Origin: Octopus sinensis
Lineage: Eukaryota
Length of the DNA stretch: 64,000 nt
Direction: 5' to 3'
NCBI RefSeq assembly: GCF_006345805.1
Contig: NW_021832715.1
Coordinates: 38,897 to 102,896, forward strand
Part shown: positions 12,645 to 57,780 of the stretch, in pieces
How positions within the stretch are numbered: position 1 is the first letter of the stretch
How the letters are laid out: every line of letters starts with the position of its first letter
Notes under the pieces: generated by a model
The model's database searches: none
Seen by the model: only the letters and a program-made list of their open reading frames with translations
What the model was told of the DNA's origin: nothing
Made by a program: the position numbers and the translations under genes

Positions 12645-13019
12645 AGACCTGTTGAGGCAATTGAAATCGAAATCGATCAAAGATCAATGGAAATTGTAGT
12701 TGTGATACCAGTGCCGGTGGCACGTAAAAGAACCATCCGAACATGGCCGTTGCCAGCGCCACCTCGACTGGCCTCCGTGCTGGTGGCACATAAAAAGCAC
12801 CAACCGATCATGGCTATTGCCAGCCTCCCCAGGCCCCTGTGCCGGTGGCACATAAAAAGCACCCACTACACTTATGGAGTGGTTGGCGTTAGGAAGGGCA
12901 TCCAGCTATAGAAACACTGCCAGATCAGACTGGGCCTGGTGCAGCCTCCTGGCTTCTCAGACCCCAGTCGAACCCATGTTAGTATGGAAAGCGGACGTTA
13001 AACAATGATGATGATGATG
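12645..13019 (+). mobile_element. Family D retroposon (modular body, ggaagggcatccagc domain, (GAT)n tail)
   Basis: Tandem ggtggcacRtaaaa modules, then ggcgttaggaagggcatccagc, ending gcggacgttaaacaatgatgatgatg. Confidence 0.85.
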
Positions 13020-21461: not shown

Positions 21462-22006
21462 GGACATAGAAAAAACAAGGAGAGAAAAAAAAATGTGTGT
21501 AGTGGCTAACGATCTATCATATATATATATGTGTGTGTGTGTGTGTAAAATACTTCAAATGTAAATGAATAATTCTGCAATGGACTGGCATTCCAGTCCG
21601 GGGGAATCTTGGGAATCTTCACTCAGAAGGTGTCAATCTCTGTAATGCCTCAGCTCAAGGCTATAGAATATGACATTTACTCAAGATGTCACAAAACAGA
21701 ATCAAAACCAGGACTCTGTGATTCTGAAGTGAACATCTTAATCATTCAGCCGTAAGGTGCTCGCTATAAACATGTATACATACATTATATTTCTGTGACA
21801 GTTAGAGGTTGGGAAAGCAACCAAGGGATAGTGCCTATCCAATATACTGCTGGTAGATCTTTTGCCCTTTTCTGTAATATGTTACTACATGTGTATATTG
21901 TCTTCTAATACTTTCTGATGCTTTGGAATAGACACACTGGAAGAATGTCTGTCTACCGGATGATGTATGTCGTTTTGTATCCTCTCCATTTTCTTATCTG
22001 CCGTAT

Positions 22007-22033
<27 letters not shown>

Positions 22034-22056
<23 letters not shown>

Positions 22057-23070
22057 CTCGTACCAAGTTAATTTGTTCGTTACTCTGTTCATTTCTTCAA
22101 ATCCCGATTGTTTTAAGTCTACTGTCCCCAATCAAAATCTTCGCAGCCCGCCATTCGTTCGCGGTTTAAATTCTTAAAAATTTTTTAAAATGCCTCGGTA
22201 TGAAGATATTTCGTTCGTCCTCCGCCATTACTTTCAATCAAAACTTCCGTCTTTCCAACCCACTTCCGGTGAACCTATATAAATAATCACCTCGTGTGCT
22301 TATCTTTCATTCACCCCTTCTTGACCACACAGCGATGATCATAGCAAGCAAGCTAAGAATTCTCATTTCATCTCTTCCTGACTCTTGTACTACACACATA
22401 CATTTGCTGCTAACCTTAAATGTTCGAATCTATTCACTAACTCTGCTTGTTCTTAAAATATAACCCTTTAATTTGTTTATCCCCTCGGTACCAGTTAATT
22501 TGTTCGTTACTCTGTTCATTTCTTCAAACCCCGATTGTTTTAAGTCTACTGTCCCCAATCAAAATCTTCGCAGCCCGCCATTCGTTCGCGGTTCGCCCGC
22601 CCTCCCACCCCCACCACCCATACCGGAGAACACTCTGTTTACACCATCCTCACCAGATATCCCCTCTACCACCGCCACCACTACGTGTGTCTGTTCCTCC
22701 TACCCCTCCTCCTCAATATACTTTCTCATTATGTATTTTACCCCTGCCTCTCTCCCCCTGGACAGAAGCAGCTAGCGCTGCAGCTCATCAAACGTCCCAC
22801 TTAACCTGTTATCTTATGTTCCTCCTGTTTTGAAATGTGTCACTGCCTCAACCGGCTATCTCCTTCCAGCCCCCTCCCCCACTCTTGATATCCTACGTTT
22901 TACTTCCTACTTTTCATTCTGTCTAGAACCTGCCACCAACCCTACCTGTCATCGTTTCTCTTTACCCCAAACCTTCCCCACTGGTGCTCCCCTATATTAC
23001 ATGCACCCCCCACCACTCTCTCTCCCTCTGCCGGAACCCTCCCCCCCCTGCCGCAATGCAACGAAAAAAG
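22034..23070. repeat. Unclassified CpG-rich insertion with an internal ~120-bp direct repeat
   Basis: tatcccctcg..ttaatttgttcgttactctg...cattcgttcgcgg near 22031 and near 22478. Begins at a (TA)n tract. Confidence 0.6.
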
Positions 23071-23072
23071 GC

Positions 23073-23301
23073 AATAACCGATCGTGGCCGATGCCAGACC
23101 CCTCTGGCACCTGTGCAGGTGGCACGTAAAAAGCACCCACTACACTCGCGGAGTGGTTGGCGTTAGGAAGGGCATCCAGCTGTAGAAAATCTGCCAGATC
23201 AGACTGGAGCCTGGGGCAGTCCCTGCTCCCCAGACCCCGGTCATACCGTCCAACCCGTGCTAGCGCGGAAAACGGACGTTAAACGATGATGATGATGATG
23301 A
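23073..23301 (+). mobile_element. Family D 3' portion
   Basis: ggtggcacgtaaaaagcacccactac...ggaagggcatccagc...ggacgttaaacgatgatgatg. Confidence 0.85.
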
Positions 23302-27461: not shown

Positions 27462-27888
27462 ATCATCATCATCGTTCAACGTCTGCTTTCCATGCTAGCA
27501 TGGGTTGGACGATTTTTGTTGAGGGCTGGCGAACCAGATGGCTGCACCAGGCTCCAGTCTTGATTTGGCAGAGTTTCTACAGCTTGATGCCCTTCCTGAC
27601 ACCAACCACTCTGAGAGTGTAGTGGGTGCTTTTTACATGCCACCGGCATGGGGGCCAGTCAGGCGGTACTGGCAACGACCTCGCTCGAATCCTTTTATAC
27701 ATGCTACCAGCACAGGTGCCAGAAGGCGACTTTGGTAATGATCATGCTCAAATGGTGCCCTTTTACATGTCCACTGGCACGGAAGCCAGTTGGCTGCTCT
27801 GGCAACGATCACGCTTGGATGGTGCTCTTGGCACCCTACTAGCACGGACACAAGTGCCAGAAAGCGACGCTGGTAACGATTACGTTTA
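27462..27888 (-). mobile_element. Family D retroposon with about four internal ~65-bp modules
   Basis: (CAT)n tail and repeated ttttacRtg.cacc.gcac..gccag...ctggcaacga modules. Confidence 0.88.
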
Positions 27889-30202
27889 ATTAAAACATTA
27901 CATCAGTTTTCTGTAAGAACTTTTTAAACTAAAGTTCCAAAGAGAACTTAATAAGGGAAAAAGTGGGTTATTTTACTATACCCTTCCAAATTCTTGATTA
28001 TGTTAAAAAAGAAAAAGCTAAAATACTATAGGCATTAGGAAAATATGGCTACAAAATTGTAAATCCAGATATTTTTGCATAAATTATTGGAAATCGTTGT
28101 TTTGAAACAGTCTTTGCAGTTCAAACTATTCGACTGAAAATAACTAAAATACATATCTAACCTTTTGGTCTTTTGGTAGGCTGATAAAATCTAAGTATCA
28201 TGTCTTGTTTACCATTACAATGTAATGATGAAGAAAATTTAATTTCAGAAGCACAAGTTCATACTATGACCTTAACTTCACGTCTCTTTTAGTGTCAATT
28301 TCGAATTCTTACATTCTCAGACATTGCAAATTGATTGTTAATACAATCCAATAGATTGCATTCAAACATTTATCTTTTCTAGATACTTTCAACATTTTTA
28401 CCAATAAGAGAAAAGTATTCGTTTCTATTGACCAGGAATATAATAATTGGTTCGCATCATGAATAGAATTGATTAAAGAGAGAAACGGTAACAACAATAA
28501 CGATGATAATAGTGGTGGAGATATAATGTCTGCGAATGATAAATATCAATGTGATGATGCATATGGAAGTGTTACATGAAAAACAGAAATAAAACTAAAG
28601 TGCATGAGCATTACACACGCACATACCTACAACAACCGACGTCATTTAAGAATTTTATGAAGGAAAGCAATAACTGTGGGAGGAGGAGGTTATAAAGTTC
28701 AAGTAGTTTCTCTCTTTCTTCCCTTTCTTTTCTCTCCCTCTTTTATTCTTTTCTCTTTTTTTTTTTTTCGCTCTTTTCTCTCTAAGTATTTATCTATGTC
28801 ATGTATGTCTCTTTATGTCTGTTTGTCTCTGTTGCAAAGACTGATTTCTCTAATGCTCCTAGCATTACTGCAATGAATTCATCCGACGGCAGAACTTCTA
28901 CATGGTTGCTTGACCTGCTAGAAATAGCTAGCAAATCTAAAATCATTATCTACTTTTTCCCCACCTTTTAAAGAATGAGCGGGCACATTGAATAAAATTC
29001 AGGTTGGGTGTAGGGAAGATGAGATGGTTACCACAACACCTTCGATAGATAGGTCCACTTTCTCAGGAGCTAAATAACTCCGTCACTATAAATTTGCCAA
29101 ATCTGGTATTGTTTCTGCCCCTAAACATCTTTAATGCACTTGTTCCACCACCCCTTCCCTCACTCCTCCCTCCATGTCTTAACTACCCTATTATTCCCCA
29201 CCTCTTAGACTCTTCTTGTGAAAATGTATTCCATTGAATGAACAAGGGAGTTTCTATGAAATCTTGCTAGAAATAGTCACAAATCTCCCTTAAATAGCAC
29301 CTTACTGTCTTAGATACATTAACCAGTGGGATGGCCACAGTTGGAAGGCCTTTTAATTATAGGTTTCCTGGATTAGGGTTTAGTTGAGAGGATCAAAGGT
29401 CAAAACAGCATCACCCAAATCAATGGTTTATGCAATATTATAGAAAATTATAGTTGTGTAACCATAAAAATACATAGTATTATAATATTTGGGTAATGGT
29501 CAATAAATGCCAGTCATAAACTGAGGTAGTTGATTTAATTGAGAATGTTTCACATTTATGAGTTTTATACTGTAGTGATTCTATGTTGTGTCAAGGTATG
29601 CGATATTTTACTGGATAATTATTAATTTCATTTCCACTTATGAATGCGTGATTATAATTTCTGTAAGCTCTGTGGCTCTCTTGTAGAGAAGAACTAAGTT
29701 TATCATACTTCAGCTGGTTTTTGAATACAAGACATTTAGTTGAATTGACACTGCAAATAATAGGCATTTTTCTATTCCTTGAAGTTACCGATTCTGATTT
29801 ATCAGGACCTCACACATACAGGTACAAAAGCGCACACATGAAATCAGTTCTTGGACATTGGTCTTATACTGTCACTTTGGAATTTATTGCATTCGTTAAG
29901 TGTTCTTCTGTAGCCCTGAGCAGAAGAAAGATGATTTCAGCTTACACAGCATTCATTATTTCAAGACACATTAAGGCTGTGAACAGACATTCAAGTGGTT
30001 TTATTCACATCTAGTCTTCAATGAAAACCTGTCCAGCCATGGATCAATATGGAAAGAGCTAAGTAATATTTCAACAGGAATAGGATCTAGCTGTACAAAA
30101 TCTGCTTTAGTGAATTCTTTCTAACCTATGCAATCATAGAAAAGTGGACATTAAGATCACAATATTGTAAAAGGTCAAGGGTCAGCTGAATTAGTGGGTT
30201 TA

Positions 30203-47629: not shown

Positions 47630-48000
47630 TCATCATCATCATCATTTAATGTCCGCTTTCCATGCTAGCATGGGTTGGAGGATTTGACTGAGGTCTGGCG
47701 AATCAGACTCCAATCTGATCTGGCAGAGTTTCTACAGCTGGATGCCCTTCGTAACGCCAATCACTCCGAGAGTGTAGTGGGTGCTTTTACGTGGCACCAG
47801 CACAAGGGCCAGTTTGGTGGTACTGGCAACGGCCATGCACAAATGGTGCTTTTTATGTGTCACCTGCACAGGAGCCAGTCCAGCAGCACTGGCGACGACC
47901 TCGCTCGAATGTTTCACATGCCACCAGCACAAGTGCTAGTAAGGCGACGTGGTAACGATCACGCATGAATAGTGTGCTTAATGTGCCATCGGCACTGCAA
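47630..48000 (-). mobile_element. Family D retroposon with a modular body
   Basis: Same tail, domain and tandem modules as the 27462 copy. Confidence 0.85.
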
Positions 48001-51946: not shown

Positions 51947-52536
51947 GAGGTATATGTATTTATATATTTGCTGGTAAGAATAGAGTTTCTAAAATGGAAA
52001 GAGAAATTAGGAAGATTGCTTTGGTCTACTGACAGAACAGCTCTCATGTTTACAGGAGATATGGGTTCAACTTTTCACAGGCAGCCTTTGACTTTTCCTA
52101 CTCAGAAAGGATTTCTCAACTCAATATATTTACTTGCTATTATTTATAGCTCTCTGTACTTTGAGACCCTTTTTCTAAAATAGATAGATGCAGTCATGGT
52201 TGTGTGGTAAGATGTTTACTTCCCAACCACGTGGTTCCTGGTTCACTTCCTCTGCTTGACACTTTAGGCAAGTGCCTTCTATTGTACCCTTGGACTGACC
52301 AAAGCCTTGTGAGTAGATTTGGAAGATGGAAAGTTGTGTTTGTTTCTGTATCTGTGTTTGTCCCCTACCACCACTTAACTGGTTGTGGGTTTGACAAAAG
52401 AGACCACTAGAATAAATACCTGGCTTAAAAGGTAAGTACCGGGATTAATTCAGTCAATTAAAATTCTTCAAGGTGATGCGCCTGCATGATTGTTGTCTGA
52501 TGACTGAAGTAAGTAAAAGATAAGACAAGAGAGGTG

Positions 52537-52573
<37 letters not shown>

Positions 52574-52599
52574 GTATATATATATAATATGTATATATG

Positions 52600-52658
<59 letters not shown>

Positions 52659-52765
52659 GTATATAAAATTCTTCAAGGTGATGCGCCTGCATGATTGTTG
52701 TCTGATGACTGAAGTAAGTAAAAGATAAGACAGAGAGGTGTATATATATATATATATGTATATTG

Positions 52766-52796
<31 letters not shown>

Positions 52797-52808
52797 TGTA
52801 TATATATA

Positions 52809-53577
52809 TGTGTTTGTGTGTCTGCATTTGTCCCCCCAACATTGCTTGACAACCGATGCTGGTGTGTTTATGTCCCTGTCACTTAGCGGTTCGGCAAAAG
52901 AGACCGATAGAATAAGCACTGGGCTTACAATGAATAAGTCCCAGGGTTGAGTTGCTTGATTAAAGGTGGTGCTCCAGCATAGTCGCAGTCAAATGACTGA
53001 AACAAGTAAAAGAGTAAAAGAGAGAGAGTAAAGAGTACACCGTTCGAAAGCTAGACCTGCCAAAGTACATCCGACATTCTACACAAGACACTTTAAATTC
53101 AAGATCTCTGTTGCAGTGTGTGCCAGATGATGATTGGTGAAATGCAAGGAGATGCACTCAACCTCTATGTCAGCATACAAAAACAAAACAAAGAAGATAG
53201 AGGCAAGTGATGGCAATGATGAGAATTATTTATCAAGCAAAAATATTGGGATCTCTATTAGTTTTGAAGAAGAGCATTCTATTGTTGAATTAACTCAGGG
53301 GTTCTCAACCATGAAGATATGTATGGATTACTATTTTATTCTGGTGGACACCCATAGCCATTTGATGTTTAAAAACTAGTTTTGTAGAAACTTTCAAAAT
53401 ACTAAGTTTGTTTATTTTTTTTTTTACACATTTATAGGTGCTTACCAGCTACATGGTTCTGGGTCCAGTCCCAGTGCATGGCACCTTGGGCAAGTGTCTT
53501 CTACTATAGCCTCGGGTCGACCAAAGCCTTGTGAGTGGATTTGGTAGACGGAAACTGAAAGAAGCCCATCGTATATA

Positions 53578-53631
<54 letters not shown>

Positions 53632-54399
53632 TATATACGATGGGCTTCTTTCAGTTTCCGTCTACCAAATCCACTCACAAGGCTTTGGTCGACCCGAGGC
53701 TATAGTAGAAGACACTTGCCCAAGGTGCCATGCACTGGGACTGGACCCAGAACCATGTAGCTGGTAAGCACCTATAAATGTGTAAAAAAAAAAATAAACA
53801 AACTTAGTATTTTGAAAGTTTCTACAAAACTAGTTTTTAAACATCAAATGGCTATGGGTGTCCACCAGAATAAAATAGTAATCCATACATATCTTCATGG
53901 TTGAGAACCCCTGAGTTAATTCAACAATAGAATGCTCTTCTTCAAAACTAATAGAGATCCCAATATTTTTGCTTGATAAATAATTCTCATCATTGCCATC
54001 ACTTGCCTCTATCTTCTTTGTTTTGTTTTTGTATGCTGACATAGAGGTTGAGTGCATCTCCTTGCATTTCACCAATCATCATCTGGCACACACTGCAACA
54101 GAGATCTTGAATTTAAAGTGTCTTGTGTAGAATGTCGGATGTACTTTGGCAGGTCTAGCTTTCGAACGGTGTACTCTTTACTCTCTCTCTTTTACTCTTT
54201 TACTTGTTTCAGTCTTTGACTGCGACTATGCTGGAGCACCACCTTTAATCAAGCAACTCAACCCTGGGACTTATTCATTGTAAGCCCAGTGCTTATTCTA
54301 TCGGTCTCTTTTGCCGAACCGCTAAGTGACAGGGACATAAACACACCAGCATCGGTTGTCAAGCAATGTTGGGGGGACAAATGCAGACACACAAACACA
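52809..54399. repeat. Spacerless 1,591-bp palindrome (inverted duplication) centred at 53604/53605
   Basis: ORFs 53134-53379(+)/53830-54075(-) and 53442-53678(-)/53531-53767(+) are identical mirrored pairs. The only difference seen on spot-checking is a 1-bp indel near 52993/54215. Confidence 0.97.
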
Positions 54400-54582
54400 C
54401 ACATGCATATATATATACATATATATGACGGGCTTCTTTCAGTTTCCATCTACCAAATCCACTCACAAGGCATTGGTCGGCCCGAGGCTATAGTAGAAGA
54501 CACTTGCCCAAGGTGCCACGCAGTGGGAATGAACCCGGAACCATGTGGTTGGTAAACAAGCTACTTACCACAAAGCCACTCC
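54172..54582 (-). mobile_element. Family A SINE, full length (its 3' half is mirrored in the left palindrome arm)
   Basis: Full family match. Confidence 0.9.
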
Positions 54583-54854
54583 GTGTATTTCCAAGCCAGG
54601 ATAGTGTTTTTATCTTCTTATTGTTAAGGCAGCAAGCTGGCAGAACTTTTAGCATGCTGGGTAGAATGCTTAGTGCCATATCATCCATTTTTCGCATTTT
54701 GAATTCAAATTCGATTAAGGTTGATTTTGCTTTTCATCCTTTTGGGATTGAAGGTACAGGTACCAGTTAAGCAGTGGGGTTGATTTAATCAACTTATTTT
54801 TCCCCACAAATTGCTGGCCGTATATCAAAATTCGAAACAATTAATTCTTTCGTC

Positions 54855-55017
54855 ATTATTATTATTATTATTCATTATTATTATTCATTATTATTATTAT
54901 TATTCATTATTATTATTATTATTCATTATTATTATTATTATTATTATTATTTATTATTATTATTATTTATCATTATTATTATTATTATTATTATTTTATT
55001 ATTATTTATTATTATTA

Positions 55018-55062
<45 letters not shown>

Positions 55063-55134
55063 TATTATTTATTATTATTATTATTTATCATTATTATTTA
55101 TTATTATCATTATTATTATTATTAACATAACTAG
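54855..55134. repeat. Imperfect (TTA)n microsatellite, ~280 bp
   Basis: Direct reading of the sequence. Confidence 0.95.
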
Positions 55135-55894: not shown

Positions 55895-56180
55895 TCATCA
55901 TTCATCATCATCGTTTAACATCCGCTTTCCATGGTAGCATGGGTTGGACGATTTTGACTGAGGGCTGGCGACCAGATGGCTGCACCAGGCTCCAGTCTTG
56001 ATCTAGCAGAGTTTCTACAGCTGGATGCCCTTCCTAACACCAACCACTCTGAGAGTGTAGTGGGTGCATTTACGTGCCACCGGCACGGGGCCAGTCAGGC
56101 GGCACGGGACCAGTCAGGCGGCACTGGCAACGACCTCGCTCGAATCTTTTACTTACCACACAGCCACTCCTGCACCTATG
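55895..56180 (-). mobile_element. Chimeric SINE: ~27-nt family A 5' end joined to a family D body
   Basis: Minus strand ggtgcaggagtggctgtgtggtaagta runs directly into aaaagattcgagcgaggtcgttgcc. Confidence 0.75.
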
Positions 56181-56518
56181 AGTGTATGTGCTTTTTTGTG
56201 TTGGCCTCTTGATCTTGTCGTCACATGCTGATCGTAAACAGAGTACCATTGTCATACAAGCGGTGCTGTTTGTTTGTAATCTTTATTGGAAACATGTTTA
56301 GGCAAGTTGAAATATTAGTTTGTTTGGAAAGGGGTGCATCTGGTAACTGATGGAGCATCCAGCCATAAGATAACCTACCTTACTGAATCCCATCTGATGT
56401 ATGCAAGCATAGTAAAAAAAAAAGGTGTTATAATAATGATGATGGTGATGATGATCGTTTTCACTTTGTAGTAGCTTTCTAGTTCTCCCTATGAATGAGG
56501 CAGGTGTATTCTATATAT

Positions 56519-56747: not shown

Positions 56748-56809
56748 TTATATTCTATATATATCAACTTTGAGATGGTGGCTCCAGAACTCTGTTAGAA
56801 GTTTCCTGC

Positions 56810-57095
56810 TTTCCCATCTCTCCATCTTTTCTACCCTCTGTACCTGTGAGGGTTGTGGCATCAGTCCTCAAACACCCACTCCGTAAGGTCCTATCAGAAG
56901 CAAATGTCATTAGTCTTTTTAGTTGGATTCTCAAGCATGACCAACTGAGATTATCCAACCATCTCATTTTGGGGCTTTCCCTGGGTCTCCAGTCAGTTGG
57001 TTTGGCTTGAAGAATGTCCTGCAGTTGTTTTCTGCAACATTCTAATCGCATGTCTATTGTTCTGCAGATATGACCTCTCAATGCAGATGAATAGC
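56810..57095 (-). pseudogene. 3' end of an RTE-clade LINE ORF
   Basis: LRGHICR...ILQAKPTDWRPRESPKMRWLDNLSWSCL...FASDRTLRSGCL matches the RTE C-terminal W.GH..R...RP.GRP..RW.D...A.DR..WR pattern. Confidence 0.8.
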
Positions 57096-57780
57096 AGCTT
57101 ATCATTGTGTGACAATTGCAGCATGGAAGGTGTTTATAAGCCATTTAAGAAACACACAAAAACCATTAGATTCACTTCAACATTTAAATTTAATTTGTCA
57201 AAATATTTTTGTCGCTTTGAGACCGCGACCTGTTCACTGACAAAGCTTCATGCTGCAATTGTTTTCGTTCCAGCACACAATCTCAGATCAAGTCACTCAC
57301 TATGCAAGTACATCTCCGTAATTGTGTGACAGTTGTAAGCAAATGTTACTGTCATATAAGGGAAGTCTTTTGTGTAGCAATCTTCCATGAAAACATGGTT
57401 GGTCATGGGAAGAAAAATTACTGTACTTGAAAACAAGAAAAAGGTTGGCAAGATGAAGGGCATCCAGCCATGCAAAAGTCTGCCTCAGTAAATTCTGTCT
57501 TGCCCATGCAAGCATGGAAAAGCGGACATTAAATGATGTATGTGTGTGTGTTTGTATGTGCATAAATGTGAGTGCCATTTTGTTTGTCTCTACACTGCTT
57601 GGAAACCAATGTTCCTTTGTTTACATGCGTGTATCTTAGTAATTCGGAAGAAGAGACTGATAGCATATGTACCAGACTTAAAAATTGGATACTGGGGGCC
57701 AACTTGTTCAACTGAGCCCTCTAAGGAAGTGCTCCAGCATGGCTGCAATCCAATGACTGAAACAAGTAAAAAAATATATA

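What the first reader, a model, noticed from the sequence alone, without database searches (positions are those of the whole stretch)
52809..54399. Spacerless 1.6-kb palindrome with breakpoints in SINE-internal (AT)n tracts
Seen: arms of 796 and 795 bp are reverse complements with no spacer. Even the interruptions in the central (AT)n mirror each other (c53596/g53613, g53571/c53638). The centre is the internal microsatellite of a family A SINE whose 3' half is missing, and the left end also lies in an (AT)n tract. Established: long spacerless palindromes are very unstable and usually decay or gain a spacer. Inference: either a very recent fold-back/template-switch inverted duplication primed by self-complementary (AT)n, or an assembly/library chimera (fold-back read). 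At the one indel, the left arm keeps the family sequence seen in other copies and the right arm lacks a base.
Basis: partly seen in the sequence, partly recalled or inferred. Interest (0 to 1): 0.8.

Follow-up and report, generated by a model that had tools for sequence, protein, structure and literature searches.

The report
Spacerless 1.6-kb palindrome at TA repeats
An octopus genome window holds a genuine-looking, essentially perfect 1.6-kb DNA palindrome, part of a small three-junction rearrangement whose joints all lie in (TA)n repeats; it is either a very young copying accident or a sequencing or assembly error, and this sequence alone cannot say which.

Summary
The symmetry axis lies between 53604 and 53605. 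The arms are 52809-53604 and 53605-54399. They are exact reverse complements except for one missing base in the right arm.

- The right arm runs on into a complete SINE, so it is the template and the left arm is the copy.
- Just left of the palindrome, the last ~76 bp of another SINE plus its (TA)n tail is duplicated in tandem.
- All three junctions lie in (TA)n tracts, which are among the longest TA-rich tracts in the window.
- All differences between copies are indels, with no substitutions.

SINE copies elsewhere in the window are 77-93% identical to the reference copy, so the duplication is very young (under about 0.5 My) or not real.

The anatomy is a 939-bp insertion into a long (TA)n tract, made of one direct and one inverted copy of the neighbouring DNA. 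This fits serial template switching (MMBIR/FoSTeS-like) better than a simple fold-back read. However, I could obtain no independent reads, haplotype or orthologous locus, so an artefact remains nearly as likely. If real, it is an ordinary member of a known class.

The parts
52190..52536 (+). Divergent SINE copy ('SINE-B'), complete, without an internal TA microsatellite. It forms the left context of the rearrangement.
   Evidence: blastn against the family copy: head is 80% identical; sequence read.
52461..52536 (+). A1: the last ~76 bp of SINE-B, and the template of the direct duplicate.
   Evidence: 98.8% identical to 52664-52744, with one 1-bp indel (AA vs A) and 0 substitutions.
52537..52665 (.). 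t1: a 129-bp (TA)n tract with G interruptions. It is the longest TA-rich stretch in the window and the presumed break or stall site.
   Evidence: TA-tract census; 5% GC.
52666..52740 (+). A2: direct (tandem) copy of A1. The junction with t1 reads ...TATA|TAAAATTC, with about 2 nt (TA) of microhomology.
52741..52808 (.). t2: a 68-bp (TA)n junction tract between the direct copy and the inverted copy. Its last 21 nt (ATATATATGTATATATATATG) equal the internal microsatellite of SINE1 read on the opposite strand.
   Evidence: the gapped self-match begins at 52781.
52809..53604 (+). Left arm, the inverted copy. It holds the SINE1 3' half (52809-53039), unique DNA (53040-53438), the SINE2 5' part (53439-53570) and half of the central (AT)n.
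   Evidence: Its outer end is not joined to a SINE1 5' half, so it is the derived copy.
53571..53638 (.). t3: the palindrome centre, CG(TA)12 C (AT)8 G (TA)12 CG, with the axis at 53604|53605. There is no spacer and no adapter sequence.
53605..54399 (-). Right arm, the template. It is the mirror image of the left arm and lacks one base (between 54214 and 54215) relative to the left arm and to the SINE family consensus.
54400..54427 (-). t4: the internal (TA)n(TG)n microsatellite of SINE1, and the site of the outer template switch. It carries 8 bp (CATGTGTG on the SINE strand) that are absent from the left copy but present in the closest family member.
54428..54585 (-). 5' half of SINE1. It lies outside the palindrome and shows that the right arm continues into an intact element.
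   Evidence: blastn: full-length SINE1 at 54600-54170; family alignment.

Best explanation
A very recent complex structural variant, made by serial template switching at self-complementary (TA)n tracts. It is a replication-based MMBIR/FoSTeS-type or fold-back repair event and has no function.

Inferred ancestral order: SINE-B(+) - long (TA)n - [SINE2 5' part, unique DNA, complete SINE1], all on the minus strand.

Inferred sequence of events:
1. A fork stall or break occurred in the long, cruciform-prone (TA)n tract.
2. The extending 3' end slipped back about 205 bp and recopied the SINE-B tail plus (TA)n. This gave the direct duplicate A2-t2.
3. Its (TA)n end then annealed to the internal (TA)n of SINE1, 0.8 kb downstream on the opposite strand, and copied back toward the break. 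This gave the inverted left arm.
4. Within the (TA)n tract it switched back to the original strand and continued. This gave the right arm and flank.

Net result: a 939-bp insertion (52666-53604) made only of local sequence, with one direct and one inverted segment and a spacerless palindrome centred on (AT)n.

What is shown: the anatomy, the polarity, TA tracts at all junctions, and the extreme youth of the copies. What is inferred: the order of switches, the in-vivo origin, and whether the SINE2 3' half was lost in the same event.

The three small indels between copies are best read as long-read consensus errors, or microsatellite slippage for the 8-bp one. On that reading the copies are effectively identical.
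For: - Perfect arms with 0 substitutions. Other SINE copies are 77-93% identical to SINE1.
- Using the octopus TE clock in PMC13282606 (JC 0.09 ~ 25 My), 0/795 substitutions gives an age under about 0.5 My.
- The right arm is contiguous with the complete SINE1 and the left arm is not.
- The adjacent tandem duplicate of 52461-52665 also differs only by a 1-bp indel outside the TA tract.
- All junctions lie in TA tracts. Four of the five longest TA-rich tracts of the window lie at this locus, and t1 spans 129 bp.
- Templated insertions from both sides in both orientations are the textbook signature of iterative template switching (established knowledge; ODIRA-type switching at short inverted repeats in PMC10766183; cruciform-forming (AT)34 as a break site in PMC12972899).
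- A single fold-back or missed-adapter read cannot give 0.8-kb arms plus a separate left junction inside more than 60 kb of gapless contig. There are no N runs and no adapter at the centre.
- An overlap-layout mis-join would need overlaps made only of 28-130 bp of (TA)n.
Against: - No independent molecule, haplotype, individual or orthologous locus could be examined.
- Long perfect palindromes with an AT-rich centre are the least stable configuration in vivo, so the prior for seeing one is low.
- All three differences between copies are indels. If two non-microsatellite indels and 0 substitutions were real mutations at a roughly 8:1 substitution:indel ratio, the probability would be about 1%. 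The locus therefore carries long-read-type consensus errors, as expected in a noisy, poorly polished region.
- Inverted-repeat chimeras are 0.2-7% of ONT ligation reads (PMC12870357, PMC13141652). Assemblers sometimes emit sequence supported by one read or by none (bioRxiv 10.1101/2025.04.22.649783).
- 40 kb of Octopus vulgaris sampled elsewhere shows no comparable palindrome, so this is not a frequent natural feature.
Confidence: 0.5

Rival explanations
1. Sequencing-library or assembly artefact. On this view the true genome has only SINE-B - (TA)n - right arm. The extra 939 bp (direct copy A2-t2 plus the inverted left arm) came either from a chimeric or fold-back long read used as layout backbone, or from mis-joining or gap-filling inside low-complexity (TA)n. 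Polishing then made the false copy look clean, because reads from the true copy map to it.
For: - Fold-back or inverted-repeat reads are a documented artefact of ONT genomic libraries: 0.55-0.6% of reads in PMC12870357 and 0.18-7.33% in PMC13141652.
- The O. vulgaris reference was built from 27.5x ONT R9.4.1 ligation reads, with FFPE-repair and end-repair, using NextDenovo and HyPo (PMC10700109). The window's species is only placed in Octopus.
- Published palindromes have turned out to be assembly errors before, as in Adineta vaga (PMC8494291).
- The differences between copies are indels only, with one private to each arm. The presumed template arm is the one that departs from the family consensus. 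This is the pattern of independent noisy consensus over the same underlying sequence.
- A perfect spacerless palindrome is biologically disfavoured.
Against: - The structure has three junctions and short arms in the interior of a gapless stretch of more than 60 kb. A fold-back read gives one junction and arms as long as the molecule.
- No adapter or spacer sits at the centre.
- Overlap-based assemblers cannot join on 28-130 bp of (TA)n.
- It is the only near-identical duplicate of >=150 bp in the 64 kb, although there are 26 TA tracts. It is therefore not a systematic TA-tract artefact.
- At least one read with the whole structure is probably needed, and such a three-switch molecule is more easily made in vivo than in vitro.
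Confidence: 0.38
2. A heterozygous inversion plus false retention of both haplotypes. Because (TA)n is its own reverse complement, the two TA tracts flanking the 0.8-kb segment can recombine as inverted repeats and flip it. The assembler then strung allele 2 (A2-t2-inverted segment) and allele 1 (segment in original orientation) in tandem.
For: - t1 and t2 differ in length and interruption pattern, as microsatellite alleles would (129 vs 68 bp).
- The 1-bp and 8-bp indels could be allelic differences.
- Tandem retention of both haplotypes is a known class of false duplication (general knowledge; similar cause proposed for A. vaga in PMC8494291).
Against: - It needs both a real inversion and an assembly error.
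- Bubbles of under 1 kb lie inside single long reads and are not normally laid out in series.
- No substitutions occur in 795 bp between the supposed alleles.
Confidence: 0.05
3. An older genuine palindrome kept identical by arm-to-arm gene conversion, or a fold-back-type transposable element with long terminal inverted repeats.
For: Large sex-chromosome palindromes keep more than 99.9% arm identity by gene conversion (general knowledge). Fold-back elements are palindromic.
Against: - There is no spacer and the centre is AT-only, which is the least stable design.
- The arms are a patchwork of two SINE fragments and unique DNA, cut exactly at SINE-internal microsatellites.
- The left arm lacks the SINE1 5' half that the right arm continues into, so the arms do not define an element.
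- There is no other copy in the window, no open reading frame with a Pfam match and no assessable target-site duplication.
Confidence: 0.03

Closest known systems
Fold-back / inverted duplications made by replication template switching (FoSTeS/MMBIR; ODIRA, PMC10766183)
   Same: The inverted copy lies directly next to its template. Junctions sit at short self-complementary or microhomologous sequence. A direct duplication accompanies it. All inserted DNA is templated from within about 1 kb.
   Different: It is very small (0.8-kb arms) and has no spacer. Described fold-back inversions usually keep a short unique spacer between the arms. Microhomology cannot be measured because every junction is buried in (TA)n.
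Human palindromic AT-rich repeats (PATRR11, PATRR22, PATRR17)
   Same: It is a near-perfect spacerless palindrome of several hundred bp per arm with an AT-rich centre. It would be expected to extrude a cruciform and be fragile.
   Different: PATRR arms are AT-rich throughout. Here the arms are 40% GC SINE and unique DNA, and only the central 68 bp is (AT)n. There is no evidence of polymorphism or translocation here.
Fold-back / inverted-repeat chimeric long reads, and whole-genome-amplification palindromes (PMC12870357, PMC13141652, Pacasus bioRxiv 10.1101/173872)
   Same: It is an exact reverse-complement continuation with no intervening sequence. Fewer than half of such reads have adapter at the junction.
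   Different: Those artefacts are single-junction and tend to be symmetric over the whole read. This structure has three junctions, short arms and normal flanks on both sides.
Cruciform-forming (AT)n fragile sequences (Flex1 of FRA16D, PMC12972899)
   Same: A long (TA)n tract (129 bp, plus the central 68 bp) is the apparent site of breakage or stalling.
   Different: Breakage was not observed here. Only the rearrangement product was seen.

Membership tests
Spacerless perfect palindrome | Two arms that are reverse complements and meet at a single axis with no spacer | tested here: met
   Axis at 53604|53605; 610 bp ungapped and 795/796 bp with one indel; hairpin energy z = -39.6.
Template-switch (MMBIR/FoSTeS/fold-back) inverted duplication | The inverted copy lies adjacent to its template, and only one arm is contiguous with ancestral flanking sequence | tested here: met
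   The right arm continues into the complete SINE1. The left arm abuts a (TA)n tract and a copy of the SINE-B tail.
Template-switch (MMBIR/FoSTeS/fold-back) inverted duplication | Microhomology or self-complementary sequence at every junction | tested here: met
   All three junctions (52665/52666, about 52781-52809, and 53604/53605) lie in (TA)n. The exact length of the microhomology cannot be determined.
Template-switch (MMBIR/FoSTeS/fold-back) inverted duplication | The structure is present in native DNA: independent molecules, or segregation as an allele | not testable with these tools
   No reads are available. Exact-protein look-ups, homologue searches and a metagenome DNA scan found no second copy of the locus.
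Long-read fold-back / missed-adapter artefact | A single junction, arms extending to the read or contig end, and often adapter at the centre | tested here: not met
   There are three junctions and 0.8-kb arms. More than 52 kb and more than 9 kb of non-palindromic gapless flank lie on either side. The centre is pure (AT)n with no adapter.
Long-read fold-back / missed-adapter artefact | No reads span both arms and both flanks, and depth on the arms is halved | not testable with these tools
PATRR-type palindromic AT-rich repeat | Arms that are AT-rich along their whole length | tested here: not met
   The arms without the centre are 40.4% GC; only t3 is AT-only.
Fold-back transposon / long-TIR element | Multiple copies with the same termini, and target-site duplication | tested here: inconclusive
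   There is no second copy in the 64-kb window. Both ends lie in (TA)n, so a target-site duplication cannot be read. The composite SINE/unique make-up of the arms argues against this family.

The most novel reading that the evidence does not exclude
The palindrome is a real, germline-transmitted allele. SINE-internal (TA)n microsatellites act genome-wide in octopus as seeds for fold-back inverted duplications. If transcribed, such a locus would be a new-born long hairpin-RNA gene whose arms carry SINE sequence. That would make it a ready source of endo-siRNAs against this abundant SINE family, and it would show that cephalopod germlines tolerate kilobase spacerless palindromes.
Probability: 0.06. 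Interest if true: 0.6.

Novelty: new member of a known kind. Interest (0 to 1): 0.3.

Why it matters
If real, this is a clean natural example of how self-complementary (TA)n tracts, here supplied by SINE tails and SINE-internal microsatellites, drive multi-step template switching. It would capture a perfect kilobase palindrome before it decays, which is useful for studying palindrome birth and stability in a repeat-rich cephalopod genome.

If it is an artefact, it flags a class of interior, three-junction false duplication at TA tracts. Standard fold-back filters, which look for symmetric single-junction reads, would miss it.

In neither case is there evidence of a function or of a new kind of element.

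Tried and rejected
1. Independent copies of the locus.
- Exact-product look-ups failed for the 81-aa ORF in the unique core and the 153-aa ORF spanning the left junction.
- A homologue search with the unique-core ORF found nothing.
- An exact 24-mer scan of JGI metagenome contigs gave 0 hits.
- An exact look-up of ten ATG-ORFs of >=100 aa from the window found none in the collection. I did not run a positive control for stop-codon handling.

2. Species or assembly identification.
- A SINE-ORF search places the window in Octopus.
- SINE copies match an O. vulgaris locus at up to 95.8%.
- The species and the sequencing technology of the window remain unknown.

3. Recurrence. Two O. vulgaris loci (40 kb) show no comparable palindrome. 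The sample is too small to be informative.

4. Coding or RNA function. There were no Rfam hits in the window, no Pfam hit for the arm ORF and no convincing exon in the six-frame scan.

5. Rejected readings.
- Two independent SINE insertions in opposite orientation: the arms share 399 bp of unique DNA and are identical.
- An adapter-containing missed-adapter read: the centre is pure (AT)n.
- The 20-nt extension of the palindrome as proof of an exact breakpoint: the same 20-mer occurs in t1.

Full report
**Observation**

The palindrome is there, exactly as described.
- Extending base by base from candidate centres gives 610 perfectly complementary positions on each side of the axis 53604|53605, and at most 7 for neighbouring centres. 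The repeat finder reports the same 100% arm pair.
- A gapped alignment of the left side against the reverse complement of the right side shows a single difference between 52809 and 53604. T52994 has no partner between 54214 and 54215. The arms are therefore 796 and 795 bp, with no spacer and no substitution.
The centre reads CG(TA)12 C (AT)8 G (TA)12 CG.
- The central 300 nt fold into one uninterrupted hairpin of -188 kcal/mol, against -30.6 +/- 4.0 for dinucleotide shuffles (z = -39.6).
- A self-blast of the whole window finds no other pair at >=95% identity and >=150 bp.

**What the arms are made of**

The window comes from an Octopus genome. A SINE-derived ORF hits 'hypothetical predicted proteins' of Octopus vulgaris, and window SINEs match a SINE in an O. 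vulgaris locus at up to 95.8%. The window has no N and is 36% GC. It is packed with a ~400-bp SINE that carries an internal (TA)n(TG)n microsatellite. There are 37 blast segments, and copies are 77-93% identical to the reference copy (alignment).

Read on the + strand, each arm consists of:
- the 3' half of one SINE ('SINE1', 52809-53039);
- 399 bp with no other copy in the window (53040-53438) and no Pfam match;
- the 5' part of a second SINE ('SINE2', 53439-53570) up to its internal microsatellite, which is the palindrome centre.

Neither arm continues into a SINE2 3' half.

1. Polarity. Beyond the right arm the sequence continues through a 28-bp microsatellite (54400-54427) into the 5' half of SINE1 (54428-54585). 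A complete SINE1 therefore lies on the minus strand at about 54170-54585. Beyond the left arm there is no SINE1 5' half, only (TA)n. The right arm is the resident sequence and the left arm is the copy.

2. A second duplication. Immediately to the left, a divergent SINE ('SINE-B', 52190-52536) ends in a 129-bp (TA)n tract (52537-52665). Its last ~76 bp then occur again (52666-52740), followed by another 68-bp (TA)n (52741-52808). The two 76-bp copies differ by one 1-bp indel (AA vs A) and by no substitution.

3. The whole derived block, 52666-53604 (939 bp), is an insertion into a long (TA)n tract. It is made only of local sequence: one direct copy of what lies to the left and one inverted copy of what lies to the right. 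All three junctions are in (TA)n. In a census of 26 TA tracts in the window, four of the five longest lie at this locus.

4. The self-match extends to 52781-54426. The last 21 nt of the left TA tract equal the SINE1 microsatellite, and the right side has 8 extra bases (CATGTGTG) that the closest family member also has. Because the same 20-mer occurs in the neighbouring TA tract, I place the outer breakpoint only within 52781-52809.

**Age and the nature of the differences**

There are no substitutions in 795 bp, which gives a 95% upper bound of 0.38% arm divergence. With the octopus TE clock used in PMC13282606 (JC 0.09 ~ 25 My, 0.065 ~ 18 My), that is under about 0.5 My. The SINEs themselves are 7-23% diverged.

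The only differences among the duplicated copies are three indels:
- one base missing from the right (template) arm, where the left (copy) arm keeps the family consensus;
- eight microsatellite bases missing from the left arm;
- one A in the tandem copy.

Two non-microsatellite indels with no substitution are unlikely as real mutations. They are what residual long-read consensus errors look like in duplicated sequence, where short reads cannot be placed. I therefore treat the copies as effectively identical. This says the locus was built from noisy long reads. It does not say whether the duplication is real.

**Mechanism**

The simplest account of the anatomy is serial template switching at (TA)n.
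1. A fork stalls or breaks in the long TA tract. Cruciform-forming (AT)34 is a documented break site (PMC12972899).
2. The 3' end slips back about 205 bp and recopies the SINE-B tail and TA tract.
3. Its TA end then pairs with the SINE1-internal TA tract on the opposite strand, 0.8 kb downstream, and copies back to the break. This makes the left arm.
4. Inside the TA tract it returns to the original strand.

Because (TA)n is its own reverse complement, each switch, including the strand switches, has built-in homology. Any join inside C(AT)nG is automatically a perfect palindrome, so the perfect symmetry of the centre needs no special explanation. This matches the known MMBIR/FoSTeS picture of templated insertions in both orientations, and ODIRA-type switching at short inverted repeats (PMC10766183). 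The steps and their order are inferred. Only the product is observed. Whether the SINE2 3' half was deleted in the same event cannot be told without an outgroup.

**Artefact alternative**

This must be taken seriously, for several reasons.
- Fold-back or inverted-repeat reads make up 0.55-0.6% of ONT genomic reads (PMC12870357) and 0.18-7.33% in ligation libraries (PMC13141652). They are nearly absent from HiFi.
- One octopus reference was assembled from 27.5x ONT R9.4.1 ligation reads with NextDenovo and HyPo (PMC10700109).
- Assemblers can emit sequence supported by one read or by none (bioRxiv 10.1101/2025.04.22.649783).
- Celebrated palindromes have proved to be mis-assemblies before (PMC8494291).
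- A spacerless palindrome with an AT centre is the least stable design in vivo.

Several points count against a simple artefact.
- A fold-back or missed-adapter read gives one junction and arms as long as the molecule, typically at a contig end. Here the arms are 0.8 kb, there are three junctions, and the structure sits between more than 52 kb and more than 9 kb of gapless flank.
- The centre holds no adapter.
- Overlap-based layout cannot join reads on 28-130 bp of TA repeat.
- The other TA tracts of the window show nothing similar.

Most routes to an artefact therefore still need one read that carried the whole structure. A three-switch molecule is more easily made by a cell than by library enzymes. 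I weigh real at about 0.5 and artefact at about 0.4.

A hybrid reading gets about 0.05. In it, a real (TA)n-mediated inversion is heterozygous and both haplotypes were retained in tandem. It would explain why t1 and t2 differ like microsatellite alleles.

**What I could not do**

No independent evidence on this locus was reachable.
- Exact look-ups of ORFs in and across the palindrome failed.
- A homologue search with the unique-core ORF found nothing.
- A metagenome DNA scan gave 0 hits.
- Two O. vulgaris loci fetched as a small control (40 kb) contain no comparable palindrome.
- The species within Octopus, and hence the sequencing technology of the window, remains unknown.

**Verdict**

If real, it is a young, non-functional structural variant of a known mechanistic class, with an unusually clean spacerless product. 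If not, it is an instructive assembly error. Interest is modest. The decisive test is read-level support across both flanks, depth over the arms, and the state of the orthologous site in other individuals and species.

Noticed in passing
window 22051-22166 and 22478-22593 (TA tract at 22004-22053): This is the only other near-identical local repeat in the window. It is a 116-bp direct repeat, 97.4% identical (2 indels, 1 substitution), with copies 427 bp apart. The first copy starts right at the end of a 50-bp (TA)n tract. It could be a partial tandem duplication at another TA tract or the terminal repeats of a small element.
   Followed up: partly
window 54850-55125: A long imperfect (ATT)n/(TTA)n microsatellite of about 270 bp lies a few hundred bp to the right of SINE1.
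   Followed up: no
window 12680-12905, 23000-23280, 27480-27900, 47669-47965, 55958-56210: A second interspersed repeat family, GC-richer than the SINE, recurs at least five times. It gives similar spurious ORFs (...LQLDALPNANHSESVVGAF...). One copy has no Pfam match. It is probably another SINE or non-autonomous element.
   Followed up: partly
window 56767-57144 (-): A 126-aa ORF with a ...RPRESPKMRWLDNL... motif is reminiscent of the C-terminal tail of LINE ORF2 proteins, but it has no Pfam hit. It is probably a decayed retroelement fragment.
   Followed up: partly
window 1-64000: The six-frame scan, Rfam and a few Pfam checks found no convincing exon, Rfam family or protein domain anywhere. 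The window is repeat-dense intergenic or intronic DNA, with 37 blast segments of one SINE family and 26 (TA)n tracts.
   Followed up: partly
L001 1-6926 and L002 (O. vulgaris GCA_951406725.2): The O. vulgaris annotation contains several small 116-161 aa 'hypothetical predicted proteins' that are SINE-derived ORFs, such as P0001 and P0003. These are likely annotation false positives.
   Followed up: no
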